Of a DNA stretch of 64,000 nucleotides, positions 51,180-60,194 are shown piece after piece. Numbering within the stretch: the first letter of the stretch is position 1; the number at the start of each line of letters is the position of its first letter. Position numbers and translations under genes: made by a program. Under the pieces are notes generated by a model. It worked only from the letters and a program-made list of their open reading frames with translations, searched no databases and was not told where the DNA came from. The stretch spans positions 186,001 through 250,000 of the forward strand of contig CDMY01000347.1 in NCBI GenBank assembly GCA_001179505.1, in the 5' to 3' direction. This stretch comes from Vitrella brassicaformis CCMP3155 (taxonomy: Eukaryota > Protista > Chromerida).

Positions 51180-51679
51180 TATATATAAGGGCCTTCCTGT
51201 CTGTGGTGGGTTGTTGTCTTTCTTGTACAGCTGGCTGTAGGTGGGGTGATGAATCACGTACAGCTATTTCTGATGCATTGCATTCATTGCATGGTGCTGA
51301 CTGATAACATTATTGATTGCTTCGTGTGTTTTTTCCAAGGGACAGGGAGGGGGGAGGGGGAGGGCATTTCATTGGTTGGCGGTGAATCGCTTGTTGTGTT
51401 TTTTTGCTGAGCTTGCCGTCCATCGACTCACTCACAGATGTTTCACACGTACACATGTTGTTATTGATTCATTCACTCACTGTACACCCGTTTGTGTCAT
51501 AATAATACTGTTTGAGTATTATATCGCTGAGGAGGTCGGGAGGCGGCGGTGTTTATTTATTTGTAAGGGGAAGAGACACATACCATGACACACACACACA
51601 CCTCACTGGACGTGAACCTGTGTGTTTTATACATCCACACGTGCACATGTGTGCTGGTTGGTGCCCTCTATTTCTCTTC

Positions 51680-51714
<35 letters not shown>

Positions 51715-52817
51715 AGCAACCCACCCACACTCACAGCCACTTACCCCAATTGGCTGTCTTGTCTACTCCATGAAGCAACGTTGGTCAGCCCATCAAGGAA
51801 GAGGCAGACAGACAGACAGGAATGAATTGATTGCTGGCCTTTGTGACGTGGGTTTTGTGACTACTACTACAGGCAGGCAGACAGACAGACAGAGACAGGA
51901 TAACTGTGTGGGAGAGTATGTGTTGCGTGTTTCGTGTTGCGTGTTATGTTTTGTGGGGGTGGGGCGGTGAGGCTTACAGGGGCGGGTTTATTAGGGCCCC
52001 CTTTGCTGAGCGGATGCCATAAATGCCATTGGAGCTGACTGTGGTGTGGTGTGCTGTCCTGCGCGTGGCTACTGCTGATAGATTGGTACGTACGCAGATT
52101 GACTGATGCGTGTTTCATGCTGAGTGTGTGAGGTATTTGTACGGCCCTGGCTCATGGCATGGCATGGATGGGATGGGATGGGATGGCTGACCGACTGTTG
52201 TTTGTGGATATTATATATATACACATACATACCATACACACCTATGACGTACATACTCTCTCCCTCCCTCCCTCTCTCCCTCTCTCCCTCCATCTCTTTC
52301 TCTCTCTCTATATGTCTCCTTGTTCCTCTTTCCTCTCCCCCGGTAACATGCGCATGGCCATTGGATGTGTTAAAGGAAGAGGCGGCCTCCGTCCGTCCAT
52401 CCGTTGGCCTGCCTAAGTGCATGCCGTTGTGTGGGGGGCTGTGATGTGGTGCTCGTTGGTCGGGCGGTTGTGGTGGGCTAGATGGATGTGCACCATTCAG
52501 GCAGACAGACAGACATGTGCTAAGTAAGTGGACTCGCTGCGCCGCGCTCACACTCATCATCTGATAGTTAACGCTCGAACACGTTTACAAGGACCAAGCT
52601 AATGTCGCCGCGCTGTCCACTCCTTTGGCACGTTTTTCCTTCACCAGTCTGTCTGTCCGTCGGGCCACTTTCTCTCTACCGACCATCATCTTGGCATTGT
52701 CATGGCACTGGGAGGTTTAAACAGAACGAGCTCTCTCTCTCTCTCTCTCCTCCCCCCCGCGCGAACGCATCATTCACTCGTCATTGTCGCTGCGTCTCGG
52801 CAGTTGGCTTGTCTTTC

Positions 52818-55800
52818 TCAGGCATGATGATGATGATGGTGATGACCATGACAATGATGACAATGATGACGACTCTCCTCCTCAGGCACTTCCATCTGAA
52901 ACACAGAGGGCAGCGGCTTGCCTTCGTCGACCGCCTTGCAGACGGGGAAGTCGGATCGCTTGGCGGGGTCGCTGGGCGGGTCGCGGCCCAGGAAGGCTCG
53001 GTCTTTGAAGAGCTCCTCGTCTGGTGTGCCGGGCGCCACGCACCACCGCCGCATAGTCAGGGGCTGTCCGTCAGGCAACGTCATCTTGGCCCTGGGGGAG
53101 TGAGAATGGAGCCATGAGAAGGACAGAAAGAGACGTGTGTGGTGCGGTGTGGTGTGGTGTCTCTGCAGATACATACTTGATTTTGTCGAGGAACTCATCG
53201 AGGCAGCACTCGGCCTTGCCCCCGCAGACGGGCATCTCGCGGCCGTTGTAGATGATCTTGACGAAGTGCTGGGCCTCTGGCCATCCACACACAGACACGC
53301 ACACGTAGAGACACACGCACTTACAGAGTGCACTGTTCTGCCTTGTTTGTTCCCTGCTCTGCAGACTTACTTCCGTTGACGCGTTTCTCCCAGAGCTCCC
53401 AGAAGATCGACGAGGCGAAGGGCGGCTGCTCGTCGTCAAACACGTCCATCGTGCCTAACCCCCACACACGCAGGAAGGTCATTGTGCCGTCACGTGTGTG
53501 TCGGGTGGCGATCTGTGACCCCTTACTGAGTGCAGCCGCGATTGTGCTGTCGTGAGCACTCATCAAAAGGAACTTCAGCGTCACGAACCTCATGTCGCTC
53601 ATGCCGGGGTACTGCAGGCCACGCAATGCAATCCACAGAACCAAACAGCTTTGGCGCACACAGATGGTTCAACACAACACGCAGACCGACAGACCTTCTT
53701 GATGATCTTGGATGCCTCTCTGAGTGACTGTCGGTCGCCCTTCGCCTTTGCCTTGATCGCAGTGACGAGGACGTCGTAAAAGGCCGACGTGGCCACGCGG
53801 GCGTAGAACTCGTCGTCCCAGATCTGTTTCATTCATGTGTCTGTTTCTCCTTTGCCTCGTGTGTGTGTCTCTGTCTGTCTGTCTGTCTGGTGTGCACTGC
53901 TGACGAATGAGAATTTGTGGTCGAGAGCGCGTTGGACGAAGTGGATGTCGCGGGGGTCCTGCAGAATCACATGGCGGCCGTCGGCGATCTGACACGTCAC
54001 GGCGTCGCCCATCTGGGCACACAAACTGACCACAGGACACCGCAGCCATGTCGCCCGCCGGGCATGTCTGTGTGTCTGTGTGTCTGTGCTGCGTACTCGT
54101 AGACGCTTTCGGTGAAGCACCAGTTGGGGTCAGGGGAGCCAGGGGGGGTTCTTGGCCAGAATGCTCTGGCATTCCTTGTCGTACTTATCCTGCACGTCAT
54201 GCCAAGTCTGCAGACACACAGACACACACACACACACACACACAGACACAGACATTCACAGGTGTTGGTCGATGGGATGGCTCGTACTGACCAGGTCGCG
54301 GAGTGCCTCGGGCCTCTTCTTGGCGCGTTTGATTTTGCCGGCGAGCATATCGAGGTAGAACTGGCGTGAGGGGCTGGGATACTCCTGGTCCTCGCCGTGT
54401 TTGGCCTTCCAAAGCTCCTCGTAGTGGCCACACGCCGCGGGCTCCTGGCCCAGAATCAGCGGGTCGTTGTGCTTGTCGGCCGTGAACACTGCAGACAGAG
54501 TTCGCACAATCTGGTCCGTGGCTCTCTTGGATGTGCTGCAGCGCGGTGAAAGCATACCAGGCACGATTTGCCAGTCCCCTGGGAGCGGTCGTTTGTTGAG
54601 GTAGGTGAAGGGCCGGAGGTCGATGTTGTTCTTGGCGGCGTAGCGATGCAAGTAGTCGCGCGTCTCGAACTCTCTAACAGGAGAGGGAGGCATCAGAAGA
54701 AGATAGCCCATATGTTCTTCTTTACTCGTTGGTACCTGACGCCTCCCCAGCCGAATTTGTCGGACATGTCTCTTCGGTCGGGCTCGCCCGGACCCTCGTT
54801 GTAGGTGTCCCGACGCATGGCGGCTTGGCCAGCAGAGAACTGCTCACCTGCACACATAGGCGCAAGCAGCCCGAGTGTGTGTGTGGATGCTGGTCGGCTT
54901 GTCCGTTACATACATACCTGACTCAGGGGGGTAGAGTCCGGCCATTTGTGCCATGGCCGACATGACAGTGCGCCATATGGCTGAAGAACGGATGCAGACC
55001 TCCTCCTGCAAACAGTGCTAGAGCGGGAGGTCGGCTTGCTTCTGTGTGTGTGTGTGTGCGTGTGTGCAGAAAGACTTCAAGGAGAACGAAAAGGATGGAT
55101 GGTGGGGAGGACGCAGCGGCCTGACCAGCATCGGCCAACTGCAGGCACGACATGCACCCCACGACACATCCAGACAGAGAGGGTCTAGTCTCAGAGATTG
55201 CATGTGCTGCTCTGTACGTTCAGCAATACCTCCTCGGGAGCATCATTCGCAAGAAGTACATCGAGAACGTCAAGCCACCCCTCCTTTCGCCGAGCTTCAA
55301 ACCGGTGCGTTGCGCGCAGTCAGAACATCGGGACGTGCAGACACACGGATGTCTGTCTCCACAGACGGGGGCAGCGGCGCAGCACTCTCTGCGTCTGTCT
55401 CATCTCACGTACGGTGAAGTAGCGGTACGGTGCCCGTGCGCCGTGACGGCACATCTCCACCACAAAGACCAGCCTGTCACTCAATCCTGCAAGAGCGAAA
55501 GACGAGACGCACAAACGGCACGAGTTCTGCAATGAATGCAGTGCCAAGCGGCCCGCTGAGGTTTGCCCGAGCCCACCGGTGCGAGCATGCAGGAACGAAG
55601 TCGCTGTGGCGTTTCCGAGCTCCTCCTCCTCGGACTCTGGCACGGAATCATCCTCAACATCAGGTGGCGCCCCAGAGGGGCTGTGGCGGATGTTGTGATA
55701 TGTGCCGTTGTTCTCGATCAGGGTGTCCTGGAGGGAATCGTCTATGAAGTCATCGATGCCGAACTGACTCACATCACCACCACCAGAGGGCACTGCGGGC

Positions 55801-55877
55801 GGGACGATGGACTGGACAAACGAGTTGGCATTGACGAACTGACCAAGGACGACGAAAAGAAAAACGTAGACGTGCAT
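52818..55877 (-). CDS. Secreted histidine acid phosphatase (branch 2), paralog A; two internal exons inverted; His-rich C-tail
   Basis: Signal peptide MHVYVFLFVVLGQFVNA, RHGARAP, IRSSAIWRTVMSAMAQMAGLYP, LLMSAHDST, QPPFASSIFWELW. Exon-by-exon match to paralog B. Confidence 0.9.
55041..55365 (+). other. Inverted segment carrying two phosphatase-A exons (55070-55144, 55224-55304) on the + strand
   Basis: The exons encode KDFKENEKDGWWGGRSGLTSIGQLQ and QYLLGSIIRKKYIE...FKP, matching paralog B exons. All junctions are phase 0. A candidate inverted microhomology is TCTGTG (55041-46) / CACAGA (55360-65). Confidence 0.85.
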
Positions 55878-55984
55878 CTTGCAACAGCTTTGCTGCAGGG
55901 CACCCACTGCGAGCCTGAGACCGGCCCCCACCCATCCGATCGGCCAGAAACCTTCCGGGCTTTCCGGGCCAGCGCAGTGAGGCG
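55878..55984. promoter_or_regulatory. Putative 107-bp bidirectional promoter region between the two phosphatase start codons
   Basis: Divergent ATGs at 55877 (-) and 55985 (+). Contains an inverted CACTGCG/CGCAGTG pair and a direct TTCCGGGC repeat. Confidence 0.5.
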
Positions 55985-58900
55985 ATGTGGCGCGTGGCAT
56001 TTCTCTTGTTTCTGTGTGCTGCATGGGCCAATGCGGGGTCCATCGGTGGCCTGGTGAGCCACAAAATACAAGATCTCGCACCACACCACACCATCCATCA
56101 CCTGGTGTGCATTTCGTGCCATGTGAGCAGTCTGCGGAGCCCCGGGTTGTGATATCCGATACGGATGACTTCGAGGAGGTCCTCACCGATGCGGGCGGGC
56201 GCTACTTCAACATCCGCCATAACCCTGCTGCCAGCAGCCGGGACGAATCGGCGTGCTACGGGTCTTCGTGCAGCATCGGCGATGGCCTCACAGGCGGCGC
56301 CAACTCATCCTCCTTTGCAGAGGCCGGGGACCCAGCAGGTACTGTACGGTACGCATGGAGAGAACAATGGATGGATGCACTCGGCGGCTGTGGGATATAT
56401 GAATGAATGAGTGCATTTGCAATGTGGTGGTGGTGGTGTTGTCCAGATGAGATGAGGCTGCTGATGGTAGTGGAGCACTGCAGACACGGTGCCCGCGCAC
56501 CCAAGCGACAATATGAGGTACGAAGTGGACCACCGGCATGGATGGAGGGATGGATGCATCATGACATGAGGCCTGTTGAGCTTCCTTTATGTGTGCTGTG
56601 TGTCATCATATGCAGGGAAACTTGACGGAGAACCGAATCAGCTACCAGAACTGGTGGATGGATGGGACCCGCAATCATTCTCCGATCTGGAATGGAGGCC
56701 GTTCGTGTGTGTGTGTGTGTGTGTGTGTGTTCAGGTATGGAGGCCACAGCGCGCTGACGCAGCTCGGCCAACTGCAGGTGGGACGATGGAACCAACGATG
56801 GTGCCCTCCATGACATACACAGACGGAATGCCACCGGGTTGTCTTCTCCAGCACTTCGTCCTTGGCTCCATAATGCGCAAGCGATACGTGGAGGAATACA
56901 AACTCCTCTCTAAAGAGCTGAGAACGGTCAGAAGGATGCACTGCACTCCAGCGGACACGCACGCACGCCGGAGTGCGTTTGTTGTCGCAGGAGGAGATCT
57001 ACATCCGTTCGTCAGCCATTTGGCGCACCGTTATGTCGGCCATGGCACAAATGGCCGGACTCTTCCCCTTACAAGCCGGTCCACCCCCCAGCCACCGAGA
57101 CCCATCCACACACACTCTCGCCTATGTCTCCTTGTCTCCTCCCATCTGATGCGAATGACTGACAGGCCCCGGCTATAGCGAGCCAGAAGAGACCATGCGG
57201 ACGGTGGTGTACCAGCACCCCAAATCGCGGCCCAACCTGACGGAGTTCTTCGGGTGGAAGGACGTCCGCGAGTTCGACACAGTGCATTACCTCCATGACT
57301 TCGCCTGCCAGCACCACGTCGACATCAAACAGTTCACAACACAGCAGAAGTTCCCACTGCCCACCGGATGGCAAATCGTGAGCAGAGCAAACCGGGATGG
57401 GCTTGACGCACTCAACGAGGGAAGTTCTGGACCCCTTTGTGTGTGTGCGTGTGTGTTTGTGTGTGTGTGCGTGTCAGGTGCCTGTGTTCACTGCCGACAG
57501 AAAGAATGACATGATCCTGCAGGGAATGGTACGCCACTCACACGCATACCTCCGCTCATACGCATCCACGCGTTGACCCGTGTCTTTTCTGTCGTCGGCT
57601 GTGTGTGCAGGAGGTCAGCGGGGTTCGCTGGCGTGTGCTGCAATTGGTAGCCTGTCTGTCTGTCTGTTGCTCAATCAGCCGTTTGCGTGCGACCAGTACG
57701 AGAAGCTCTGGAAAGCCAAACACGGCGAGAGCAAGACATACCCTGACCCCTGCTCTCAGGTGGTGTCAGGCCATCCATCCACAAGACGTGGCATGTCAGT
57801 TATTGTGGTAGTGTGTGTCCTGTTGGCCTGCCTGCAGTATTACATGGACTTCAGCAGCGGCCAATGGGACCGCAAAGCCGACAAACCACCCGAGTTCAAG
57901 GGCATGGTACACCTACTGCAGGCCATGGCTGCACAGCCAGGCCAGGTTTTGCCCATTTGTCTGCTCGTATTTGTGTTTCTTCGCCCACAGAACTGGATCA
58001 AGCTCAACGACAAGTACAAAGCCGATCTGGAAAACCTACTGAAGAAAAATCCTCCCGGTACCTGGACATCCAGACGGCGACAGAGAGAGAAGGGTCCAAA
58101 ATGCAGTTAGTGAGTGGCCGGCCGTCGGCCGTCTCCTACCTTGTCTGTCAGGGCCTGTCAACGCCGAGTTCTGCATGCAGGACGACCCTCTCGGGTAGGC
58201 AGGGCAGCTGGGTGGCTGGCGATGTATGTGTCATGTGTCATGTGCAATGTGTCTGTGCGTGTGGTTGGGTCGGTCGACGCATACATACACACATGTACAT
58301 GCAGTGTGGTGGCGCTGTTGGGCGACGTCACACAGTGCCTTATCGCCGGTAGGTACGCAGGCAGACGGAACGAACACATATCCGGTTGTGAGACACGTCT
58401 TGGTGCAGCTGGCCGCAAGACGGTCTTCAACAATGACGATATCAAGTAAAAAGGAGGGAGTCTCTCTGCTGCCGGGTTATGTCATCTGACTGGTGTGGTG
58501 TGTCCAGAAAGTTGAATTTCTTCAACGACCTCCGATATGTCTTCAACTGGGGAGACGAGGTCAGTCCGTGGCGCGCAGCACAGCACAGCCACACATGGGT
58601 GGTGTCCATCCACCTGTGGCGGTGTCCGTCCCGTGTGTGCAGTTCTACGCGCGTGTCTTTTCTGCGGCCTTCTACGGCATTTTGCTGACGGCCTTCACCG
58701 CCAAGGCCTCACACGACCCCAAACTCATACGCACCGCCGCCAAGACTATCAAGAAGGTCCGTATGAGAGGGAGTGGAGTGTATGGCGATGGTCTGTCTGT
58801 CTGTGTGCGTGTGTGTGTGTGAGCACTACCCTGGTATGGGTGAGATCCACATGGACAAGCTGAAGCTGCTGCTGTTCAGCGGCCACGACACCACCATAGC

Positions 58901-59563
58901 CGGAATGCTCGATGTCATGGGCGTCTTCGACTACACACAACCGCCGTAACCACACCTCACCCCACCACACACGCACATCGATCACATGCATTCGCACACA
59001 CATATACACATCCACGTCGATGCCCCTGGCCGGCCACGCAGGTTTGCGTCGTCTGTGTTCTTCGAGCTGTGGGAGAGGGGCAAGCAGCACTACGTCAAGG
59101 CAAGCAAAACAAGCCGACAGACAGACAGAGAAACAAACAAACATGCCAGCCACATGTGCGTGTCTCGGTCTGTGTGTCTGCAGGTGATATACAATGGCAA
59201 GGAGCTGGACCCCTGCGGCGATGGCAACACAGGCGGATGCCGGCTCTTCAAATTTGCCCACAAAATCAAGTAGCCAGCCACGACACAACACAACACCACA
59301 CCGAAGAACTCCCTCCCTCCCTCCCCCTGTGTGTCCGCGTCTGCAGGGGCAAGATGACCTTGCCCGACCAGTCTCTGCTGACGATGGAGCGGTGGTGCAT
59401 GTCGCCCGACTCCCCCGACGAGCACATGTTTGAGGACAAGGACTTCCTCGGCCGCGACCCGCCCAAGAAACACGCCACGCGGGCCGACTTCCCCGTGTGT
59501 GTGGACCTGGACAAACACACGGGGAAGAGCAGCTTCATGGAAATGAAAGTAGGACACATGTAG
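55985..59563 (+). CDS. Secreted histidine acid phosphatase (branch 2), paralog B
   Basis: Signal peptide MWRVAFLLFLCAAWANA, VVEHCRHGARAP, SALTQLGQLQ-HFVLGSIMRKRY, LLFSGHDTT. Stop at 59561-59563. Confidence 0.92.
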
Positions 59564-60194
59564 TGAACCAACGAACGAATGATATGGGTAGTGGCAGTGC
59601 AGTGGAGTGGGTGGGCTGAGGGGGAGGGGGTAGTGCAGTGGGGTGTTCTGTGCGGTGTGATTGGGTTCTTTCTTTCTGGTTGTGACTGATCGATCGGTGT
59701 GCTTTCATTAGTATGCTGTTTAAGCTTGTTTGCAACATGATGTTGCATGTTTGCACGGACACTCACACGTGTAATTAATCCACTGGAGGGACACTGAGAC
59801 GCATTAGTGAGTCTATGTCATCATGGACGAGTCAGGAAACAAGACGACAAACAACAAAGAACACACACACACACACACACATGCAGACGGACACGCACCT
59901 AGACAGAAATGGGTCAGTCAGTCAGTCAGTCAGGATGTCTGTACGAAACCCAAAAAGAAGCGATAAAAAAGGCAGCAGCACAACCACCAGCAGCAGCAGA
60001 GGCAGCTTAGCTTTCACATAAGAAAGAAAGCAGTATGTAAGACATCTGGCTGACCCCCCCAAAAGGACCAAACCGGTCGGCTAACCAGAAACCAACAAAA
60101 ACAAGAAGGAACCGGCCAACCCCTCTCACTCTCCCCTCTAGGCCATTTACCTACGCATATAGGACCCGCACCCAGCCCACCCGCGCCGGTCGTT

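What the first reader, a model, noticed from the sequence alone, without database searches (positions are those of the whole stretch)
55041..55365. Intragenic inversion flips two conserved exons of acid phosphatase A onto the opposite strand
Seen: gene A runs on the minus strand (RHG exon ends in phase 0 near 55412; EEVCIRSS exon starts at 55005). The two exons that lie between these in paralog B are intact here but on the + strand, with their own AG/GT(GC) sites and all in phase 0. Flipping 55041-55365 at the 6-bp inverted pair TCTGTG/CACAGA rebuilds two normal-looking introns. As assembled, the mRNA would skip both exons in frame (-52 aa), losing the G.LT..G..Q...LG...R..Y element conserved in this family. 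Inference: a recent natural inversion or haplotype, an invertible on/off switch, or an assembly error at TG microsatellites. The undecayed inverted exons argue for a very recent event or an artefact.
Basis: partly seen in the sequence, partly recalled or inferred. Interest (0 to 1): 0.85.

Follow-up and report, generated by a model that had tools for sequence, protein, structure and literature searches.

The report
Real exon inversion in dead phosphatase gene
In the alga Vitrella brassicaformis, one of two neighbouring acid phosphatase genes carries a real 325-base flip of two exons and also a frameshift. It is a dead gene that is still transcribed and oddly spliced, not an assembly error or an on/off switch.

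Summary
Gene A (minus strand) has its third and fourth coding exons (55070-55144, 55224-55304) intact but on the plus strand. They sit exactly between the RHG exon (55486-55413) and the EEV exon (55005-54918), where the head-to-head paralog B has them in line.

It is not an assembly artefact. Contigs built separately from three DNA data sets, one of them the probable source, run without a difference through both breakpoints. RNA contigs cross them too.

The mRNA uses cryptic GT..AG sites on the gene's strand inside the flipped DNA. This gives a 65-nt antisense pseudoexon (55294-55230) and a long composite exon (55138-54918). Every isoform seen has a premature stop: TAG at 55020-55018, or TGA at 55322-55320 when 55295-55412 is retained.

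A second lesion, a +1 frameshift at about 54133-54145 followed by TGA at 54132-54130, is present in DNA and in three RNA assemblies. Flipping the segment back would therefore not restore the gene.

Gene A is a transcribed pseudogene. Paralog B is intact and is a His_Phos_2 histidine acid phosphatase. The inversion may have arisen between the TG-rich and CA-rich tracts that bracket exons in this genome; that is inference. This is a known kind of event and of modest interest.

The parts
52818..55898 (-). Gene A: a transcribed pseudogene of a secreted histidine acid phosphatase. The mRNA 5' end is at least at 55898, the ATG is at 55877-55875, and the ancestral stop TGA is at 52820-52818. Transcript contigs run on to 51364.
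   Evidence: RNA contig L009 aligns to 55898..51986 in 13 blocks, L010 to 51364; ATG and stop
55413..55486 (-). RHG exon of gene A (..VVEMCRHGARAPYRYFT). It ends in phase 0, with donor GTACGT at 55412.
   Evidence: Pfam His_Phos_2 profile positions 2-17
55041..55365 (.). The breakpoints cannot be fixed exactly. Hard bounds are 55006-55069 on the left and 55305-55412 on the right; the likeliest places are within 55036-55066 and 55333-55370.
   Evidence: DNA contigs cross both ends
55070..55144 (+). Flipped exon 'inv1' (25 codons, ..WWGGRSGLTSIGQLQ). Its acceptor lies behind a (TG)n tract at 55043-55067. Its donor is GC (GCACGA), where paralog B has GT.
55224..55304 (+). Flipped exon 'inv2' (27 codons, QYLLGSIIRKKYIENVK..), with donor GTGCGT at 55305.
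55295..55412 (-). New 118-nt intron. It runs from the genuine RHG donor to a cryptic acceptor (..TTTGAAG) in the antisense of inv2's 3' end. It is spliced out in run X7 and retained in RNA contig L009; when retained, the reading frame stops at TGA 55322-55320.
   Evidence: joint 55294->55413, site letters, L009 block 55487-55230, stop
55230..55294 (-). 65-nt pseudoexon, antisense to inv2.
55139..55229 (-). New 91-nt intron. The cryptic donor GTATTG is the antisense of the start of inv2. The cryptic acceptor is the palindrome CTGCAG at the end of inv1.
   Evidence: joint 55138->55230 in X7 and in L009
54918..55138 (-). Composite exon made of the antisense of inv1, the TG tract, the rest of the old intron and the EEV exon. 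The old EEV acceptor at 55006 is not used. There is an in-frame TAG at 55020-55018.
   Evidence: X7 record 26 runs 54933-55138 unspliced; L009 block 55140-54916; translation
54130..54145 (-). Second lesion: a +1 frameshift after ..AKNPP (a C7 run plus T), then TGA at 54132-54130. The reading frames on both sides are conserved with paralog B.
   Evidence: identical in DNA contigs and in RNA contigs L009, L010, L011; gene callers give only a 259-aa 3' ORF, P0001
55899..55944 (.). Very short shared upstream region between the observed 5' ends of the A and B transcripts. The two ATGs (55877 minus strand, 55985 plus strand) are 107 nt apart.
   Evidence: L009 starts at 55898, L012 starts at 55945
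55945..59627 (+). Paralog B: an intact histidine acid phosphatase with all exons in line. The exons that match the flipped ones are 56616-~56652 plus 56735-56777, and 56852-56926.
   Evidence: RNA contig L012; Pfam PF00328 60.2 bits and 35.5 bits

Best explanation
Gene A is the damaged member of a head-to-head pair of old paralogs that encode secreted histidine acid phosphatases in Vitrella brassicaformis.

About 325 bp, holding two whole exons, the intron between them and parts of the two flanking introns, was inverted in place. The inversion is fixed in every data set examined.

The organism splices short introns. The spliceosome therefore does not jump the 407 nt to the old acceptor. It pairs the genuine RHG donor with nearby cryptic sites on the gene's strand inside the flipped DNA, or it retains that interval. 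The 52 conserved codons are replaced by antisense-derived sequence that contains a stop.

A second, independent lesion lies about 0.9 kb downstream: a +1 frameshift in a C-run. Gene A is therefore a pseudogene. It probably keeps being transcribed because it shares a very short divergent upstream region with the intact paralog B (inferred).

How the inversion arose is also inferred. Local introns are CA-rich at the 5' end and TG-rich at the 3' end, so an exon block is bracketed by tracts that are reverse complements of each other: here (TG)9 at 55043-55060 and CAGACACAC at 55338-55346. Such tracts could promote a template switch or break-and-rejoin inversion.
For: Shown:
- Exon order and strand.
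- DNA contigs of X4 (probable source; 54934-55863), X1 (54934-56121) and X3 (54934-56693) are colinear with no differences across 55041 and 55365. They have no splice joints, so they are DNA.
- The gene is single copy in the 72.7-Mb assembly.
- X7 RNA joints 55294->55413 and 55138->55230 have GT..AG on the minus strand. X7 also has an unspliced contig 54933-55138, no 55413->55005 joint and no strand-change joint.
- JGI transcript contig L009 is colinear over 55487-55230 and 55140-54916.
- Stops are TAG 55020-55018 and TGA 55322-55320.
- Frameshift: 232 nt of mRNA lie between two frames that are both conserved with B (232 mod 3 = 1), followed by TGA 54132-54130. It is the same in L009, L010 and L011. 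Public ORF calls on the transcript are split into 162, 182 and 259 aa.
- B is intact and is His_Phos_2 at 60.2 bits.
- Intron polarity in 22 RNA-supported local introns: CA/AC 215 in 5' halves against 87 in 3' halves; TG/GT 118 against 281.

Inferred: the reason for continued transcription, the role of short-intron splicing, and the origin at TG/CA tracts.
Against: - All data sets are 100% identical over the locus. They may all descend from one isolate, so fixation in the species is not shown.
- Logan contigs drop rare variants. A minor orientation, or a rare exon-skipped isoform, cannot be excluded.
- The border complementarity is weak: 12-14 nt at 79-83%. There is no excess folding. The TG/CA origin is therefore only a plausible story, and the breakpoints are not resolved.
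- No outgroup with the ancestral orientation was found. Polarity rests on paralog B and on the order in prostatic acid phosphatase.
- Which of the two lesions came first is unknown.
Confidence: 0.85

Rival explanations
1. Assembly artefact: a small contig was placed in the wrong orientation between TG microsatellites, and the real genome is colinear.
For: The left border lies in a (TG)n tract. The assembly is a short-read draft of 1064 contigs.
Against: - Three separately built k=31 contig sets, including the probable source run, pass both borders unbranched with no differences.
- The TG tract (about 25 nt) is shorter than k.
- RNA contigs contain the antisense of inv2 joined to the RHG exon, and they cross both borders.
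Confidence: 0.02
2. Reversible or polymorphic inversion: a stochastic on/off switch, or two haplotypes, with the colinear form present in some cells or strains.
For: - Short inverted TG/CA tracts sit near both borders.
- Contigs drop rare variants (notes).
Against: - Only one orientation appears in 3 DNA sets and in the RNA sets, and no contig breaks at the borders.
- There are no long inverted repeats and no special fold.
- The downstream frameshift would leave the 'on' state broken.
Confidence: 0.05
3. Gene A is still functional: a rare exon-skipped or otherwise repaired isoform, or the separate ORFs, yield a working protein.
For: - Outside the two lesions the roughly 640-codon frame is intact.
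- The transcript is at least as well covered as B's in X7 (depth is a poor measure).
- The antisense replacement happens to keep the frame: 66 codons replace 52.
Against: - Every observed isoform has a stop before the EEV exon.
- The frameshift separates the RHG motif from the HD motif in any isoform.
- The lost 52 residues lie inside the Pfam core, between profile positions 17 and 94.
Confidence: 0.04
4. Not an in-place inversion: a patch copied from another paralog was inserted backwards in place of the original exons.
For: The flipped exons have the same strand as paralog B. A and B share a 31-nt identical stretch in the next exon, which hints at sequence exchange.
Against: - The flipped exons are only 48-67% identical to B in protein, like the rest of A.
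- There is no other copy in the genome.
- The segment holds exactly the missing exons plus matching half-introns.
Confidence: 0.03

Closest known systems
Pseudoexon activation by intragenic inversion in human disease genes (a class named by Dhir and Buratti 2010, as cited in PMC8819188, whose reference list includes the DMD cases of Cagliani 2004 and Madden 2009)
   Same: A piece of a gene is flipped, so the normal exons are lost from the sense strand. Cryptic GT..AG sites in the flipped DNA are used, new exons enter the mRNA, and the reading frame is cut short.
   Different: Here the event is in a free-living alga, is only about 325 bp, is apparently fixed, and affects a duplicated gene whose partner is intact. 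The new exons are the antisense of the old exons themselves.
Microinversions seen in comparative genomics
   Same: A sub-kilobase inversion with little or no homology at the breakpoints and no change in copy number.
   Different: It is usually found by comparing species. Here it is inferred from a paralog and confirmed by reads and RNA, and it lies wholly inside one gene.
Histidine acid phosphatases, Pfam PF00328 His_Phos_2 (for example human prostatic acid phosphatase, PDB 1cvi/1nd5)
   Same: - RHGxRxP motif.
- The EEV exon aligns to PAP residues 68-95 (E 7e-4).
- HD motif.
- Paralog B scores 60.2 bits.
   Different: - Long insertions and a C-terminal extension.
- A has a His-rich tail.
- A is broken in two places.
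Bacterial invertible DNA switches (fim, hin, shufflons; own knowledge)
   Same: A DNA segment in the opposite orientation changes what is expressed.
   Different: No defined inverted repeats, only one orientation seen, a eukaryotic nuclear gene, and the other state would also be non-functional.

Membership tests
Histidine acid phosphatase (Pfam PF00328, His_Phos_2) | RHGxRxP catalytic motif near the start of the domain | tested here: met
   A has CRHGARAP in exon 55486-55413, and B has CRHGARAP at 56455-56517. A's exon matches profile positions 2-17.
Histidine acid phosphatase (Pfam PF00328, His_Phos_2) | Score above Pfam's gathering threshold (23.6 bits) | tested here: met
   B N-terminal part 60.2 bits, B C-terminal part (P0003) 35.5 bits, A 3' ORF (P0001) 29.6 bits. 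A's 5' and middle ORFs alone give no hit, and A's EEV exon alone gives 19.7 bits.
Histidine acid phosphatase (Pfam PF00328, His_Phos_2) | C-terminal HD motif (proton donor) | tested here: met
   A has ..LMSAHDSTI.. (53611-53527; P0001) and B has ..FSGHDTTI.. (P0003).
Histidine acid phosphatase (Pfam PF00328, His_Phos_2) | One continuous reading frame joining the RHG and HD motifs (a working enzyme) | tested here: not met
   In gene A there are stops at 55020-55018 or 55322-55320, and a frameshift followed by TGA at 54132-54130. B meets this feature, apart from one retained intron in contig L012.
In-place microinversion | Segment on the opposite strand to its flanks, relative to the homologous order | tested here: met
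In-place microinversion | Both junctions supported by sequence data independent of the assembly | tested here: met
   Contigs of X1, X3 and X4; RNA contig L009.
In-place microinversion | Ancestral orientation seen in an orthologous locus of another strain or species | not testable with these tools
   No relatives were found: the metagenome scans gave only chance hits. All runs are identical to the window.
Pseudoexon activation by intragenic inversion | mRNA contains new exons bounded by canonical sites on the gene's strand within the inverted DNA | tested here: met
   Introns 55295-55412 and 55139-55229 are GT..AG on the minus strand. L009 shares the second.
Invertible genetic switch | Defined inverted repeats at both borders | tested here: not met
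   The best border pairs are 12-14 nt at 79-83%, among 30 comparable pairs in 800 nt. Fold z-score is +0.5.
Invertible genetic switch | Both orientations present in a population | tested here: not met
   Only one orientation is seen in 3 DNA and 2 RNA contig sets. Contigs can hide rare variants, so a minority form is not excluded.
Invertible genetic switch | A dedicated recombinase nearby | not tested
   Not looked for.

The most novel reading that the evidence does not exclude
Vitrella introns start CA-rich and end TG-rich, so every exon block sits between tracts that are reverse complements of each other. Exon-block inversion would then be a recurrent, architecture-driven class of mutation in chromerid genomes, perhaps still occurring at low frequency. 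This locus would be its first documented case.
Probability: 0.12. Interest if true: 0.6.

Novelty: new member of a known kind. Interest (0 to 1): 0.33.

Why it matters
It gives a clean natural example, checked against reads and RNA, of what a short-intron spliceosome does when exons are flipped. It does not skip them. It recruits nearby cryptic sites, partly palindromic ones such as CTGCAG, and makes pseudoexons from the antisense of the old exons.

It corrects the likely annotation of gene A: a pseudogene with split ORFs, not a shorter enzyme.

It also raises a testable idea: the polarised CA/TG intron design of this alga may predispose it to exon inversions. For the biology of the phosphatase family itself it matters little, because paralog B is intact.

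Tried and rejected
1. Assembly error: rejected.
2. In-frame exon skipping: no such joint in X7, and none in L009.
3. Searches for wild or related copies in JGI metagenome contigs. An exact 24-mer of inv2 gave nothing. A degenerate 23-mer of the EEV exon gave 4 loci (L005-L008) that are chance matches.
5. PDB sequence search with each flipped exon alone: no hit, as they are too short. Pfam on single exons: weak or nothing.
6. Folding of the segment with its borders as DNA: no better than shuffles.
7. Look-up of L009's 155-aa first ORF in other assemblies: not on record.
8. Literature: nothing on Vitrella acid phosphatases that bears on this. A first search on microinversion and cryptic splicing was uninformative.
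9. phmmer of an 80-aa stretch of A against 1.84 billion representatives found only A's and B's own fragments and low-complexity noise, so no outgroup was obtained.
10. No full-length typed protein of A was sent to any search tool, since a spliced sequence has no reference. Pieces were searched by reference instead.

Full report
**Setting.** The window is contig C347:186001-250000 of a 72.7-Mb assembly in 1064 contigs. An earlier follow-up note of this scan names the organism as Vitrella brassicaformis; I did not verify the name independently. Two paralogous genes lie head to head. Gene A is on the minus strand, with its ATG at 55877. Gene B is on the plus strand, with its ATG at 55985. The observed transcript ends, 55898 and 55945, are only 46 nt apart.

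- tblastn of A's exon peptides puts the RHG exon at 55493-55413 (-) and the EEV exon at 55005-54916 (-).
- The two pieces that lie between these in B are found in A on the plus strand, at 55070-55144 and 55221-55304.
- Both flipped exons are open and phase 0, and they keep their own acceptor and donor sites. The first has a GC donor where B has GT.
- Read in line, A aligns with B's protein over 369 residues without a stop.
- The 52 flipped residues score 115 against B, at exactly the expected place. 1000 shuffles gave 27.8 +/- 4.3, with a maximum of 50.
- The intron between the flipped exons has the local intron polarity (CA-rich start, TG-rich end) in the plus sense, which is a second, independent marker of orientation.

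**It is real DNA, not an assembly error.** It laid the per-run Logan contigs of four runs.
- Runs X4 (the probable source of the assembly), X1 and X3 come from three different studies. Each gives a contig that runs from 54934 to at least 55863 with no differing letter. Each therefore crosses both borders in the assembled orientation.
- These runs show no splice joints, so they are DNA.
- The TG tract at the left border is shorter than the word length of those assemblies, and the locus is single copy in the genome.
- A transcript contig from a JGI sample (L009) is also colinear with 55487-55230 and 55140-54916.

**What the RNA does.** Run X7 shows GT..AG joints on the minus strand only, so it is RNA.
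- The genuine RHG donor at 55412 is joined to a cryptic acceptor at 55295.
- A 65-nt pseudoexon follows (55294-55230, antisense to the second flipped exon).
- A cryptic donor GTATTG is then joined to the palindrome CTGCAG at 55139-55144, which on the other strand is the end of the first flipped exon.
- The transcript then runs unspliced from 55138 through the left border and the old acceptor into the EEV exon.
- Contig L009 has the same second intron but retains 55295-55412, so at least two isoforms exist.
- No joint from 55413 to 55005 and no strand-changing joint is listed.
- In the spliced form, 66 codons replace the original 52 and the frame is kept, but a TAG lies at 55020-55018. In the retained form the frame stops at TGA 55322-55320.
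- The local introns are 62-150 nt long. Preference for nearby sites over a 407-nt jump is my inference from this.

**A second lesion.** Downstream, the frame conserved with B through ..AKNPP and the frame conserved with B from ..DPNWCF.. onward are one base out of step.
- The mRNA holds 232 nt between two phase-0 exon borders, and a TGA follows at 54132-54130.
- The site is a C7 run plus T.
- It is identical in the three DNA contig sets and in three transcript assemblies: L009, L010 and Logan ERR558152.
- Public gene callers split the A transcript into ORFs of 162, 182 and 259 aa. The last is P0001, which confirms my exon model of the 3' part residue for residue.
- Apart from these two lesions the ancestral frame of about 640 codons is intact to the TGA at 52820-52818.
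- Gene A is therefore a pseudogene, and flipping the segment back would not repair it. Which lesion came first cannot be told.

**Family.**
- B's transcript (L012) encodes an open frame with a signal-peptide-like start. It matches Pfam His_Phos_2 at 60.2 bits for the N-terminal part and 35.5 bits for the C-terminal part.
- A's 3' ORF reaches 29.6 bits, against a threshold of 23.6.
- A's EEV exon aligns to residues 68-95 of human prostatic acid phosphatase (E 7e-4).
- The RHGxRxP and HD motifs are present in both genes.
- The flipped residues fall between profile positions 17 and 94, inside the domain core.

**Origin (inferred).** In 22 RNA-supported introns of A and B, CA/AC dinucleotides are concentrated in the 5' halves (215 against 87) and TG/GT in the 3' halves (118 against 281). 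This agrees with an earlier follow-up note on this genome.
- An exon block is thus preceded by a TG tract and followed by a CA tract, which are reverse complements of each other. Here they are (TG)9 at 55043-55060 and CAGACACAC at 55338-55346.
- A template switch or break-and-rejoin between such tracts would flip exactly an acceptor-to-donor block, as seen.
- The complementarity is weak and the breakpoints cannot be fixed within about 25 nt, so this remains a hypothesis.

**Rivals.**
- Assembly artefact is excluded in practice.
- A switch or a polymorphism is unsupported and would be pointless given the frameshift. However, contigs hide rare variants, and all data sets may come from one isolate.
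- A backwards patch from another paralog is unlikely. The exons are as diverged from B as the rest of A, and no third copy exists.

**Comparison and novelty.** Intragenic inversion is a recognised route to pseudoexons in human disease genes (PMC8819188, citing Dhir and Buratti 2010 and DMD cases). Small inversions are well known from genome comparisons (own knowledge). This is a new member of a known kind. It is well documented and tidy, and its one forward-looking angle is the possible link to polarised introns.

Noticed in passing
window 57529-57678 (paralog B): The RNA joint reported as a 147-nt skip with TA..TC ends is best read as a 3-nt microexon GAG at 57611-57613. It would lie between two canonical introns, 57529-57610 and 57614-57678. 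This gives B ..ILQGM-E-PFACDQYE.., matching A's ..ILGQEPAACGHYE... The same three letters are in the JGI contig L012.
   Followed up: partly
window 54933-54963 and 57033-57063: A and B share 31 identical bases in the EEV exon, and 91% identity over 82 nt. Elsewhere the two proteins are only about 50-65% identical. This could be a short gene-conversion tract between the inverted paralogs, or strong constraint.
   Followed up: no
window 55877-55985: The start codons of A and B are 107 nt apart on opposite strands, and the observed transcript ends (55898, 55945) are 46 nt apart. This is a very compact divergent promoter, which may keep the dead gene transcribed.
   Followed up: partly
window 56616-58700 compared with 53900-55100: The paralogs differ in intron positions at several places. 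B has introns that A lacks: one inside the inv1-equivalent exon, after KKNPP, and around the microexon. A has one that B lacks (54674-54735). One junction is shifted: A FSF|IWDDE against B NWGDE|FYARV. The duplication is therefore old.
   Followed up: partly
window 55145-55146: The first flipped exon has a GC donor (GCACGA), where B has GTGGGA. This is either a GC-AG intron or the first sign of decay after the inversion.
   Followed up: no
window 52821-52865: A's ancestral C-terminus is a His/Cys-rich tail (HHCHHCHGHHHHHHHA) that B lacks. B ends ..KVGHM.
   Followed up: no
window 54288-54336; G000:C305:219086-219125: A 40-49-nt piece of gene A's exon/intron border recurs on another contig at 93% identity. 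DNA contigs of three runs match only this piece and continue into unrelated sequence.
   Followed up: no
window 51364-52818: Transcript contig L010 runs 1.45 kb past A's stop and carries a further 163-aa ORF. This is either a long 3' UTR or read-through into a neighbouring gene.
   Followed up: no
L012:1290-1596 (window 58641-58947): B's transcript contig retains the 67-nt intron 58760-58826. This splits its ORF call into 489-aa and 174-aa pieces although the gene is intact.
   Followed up: partly
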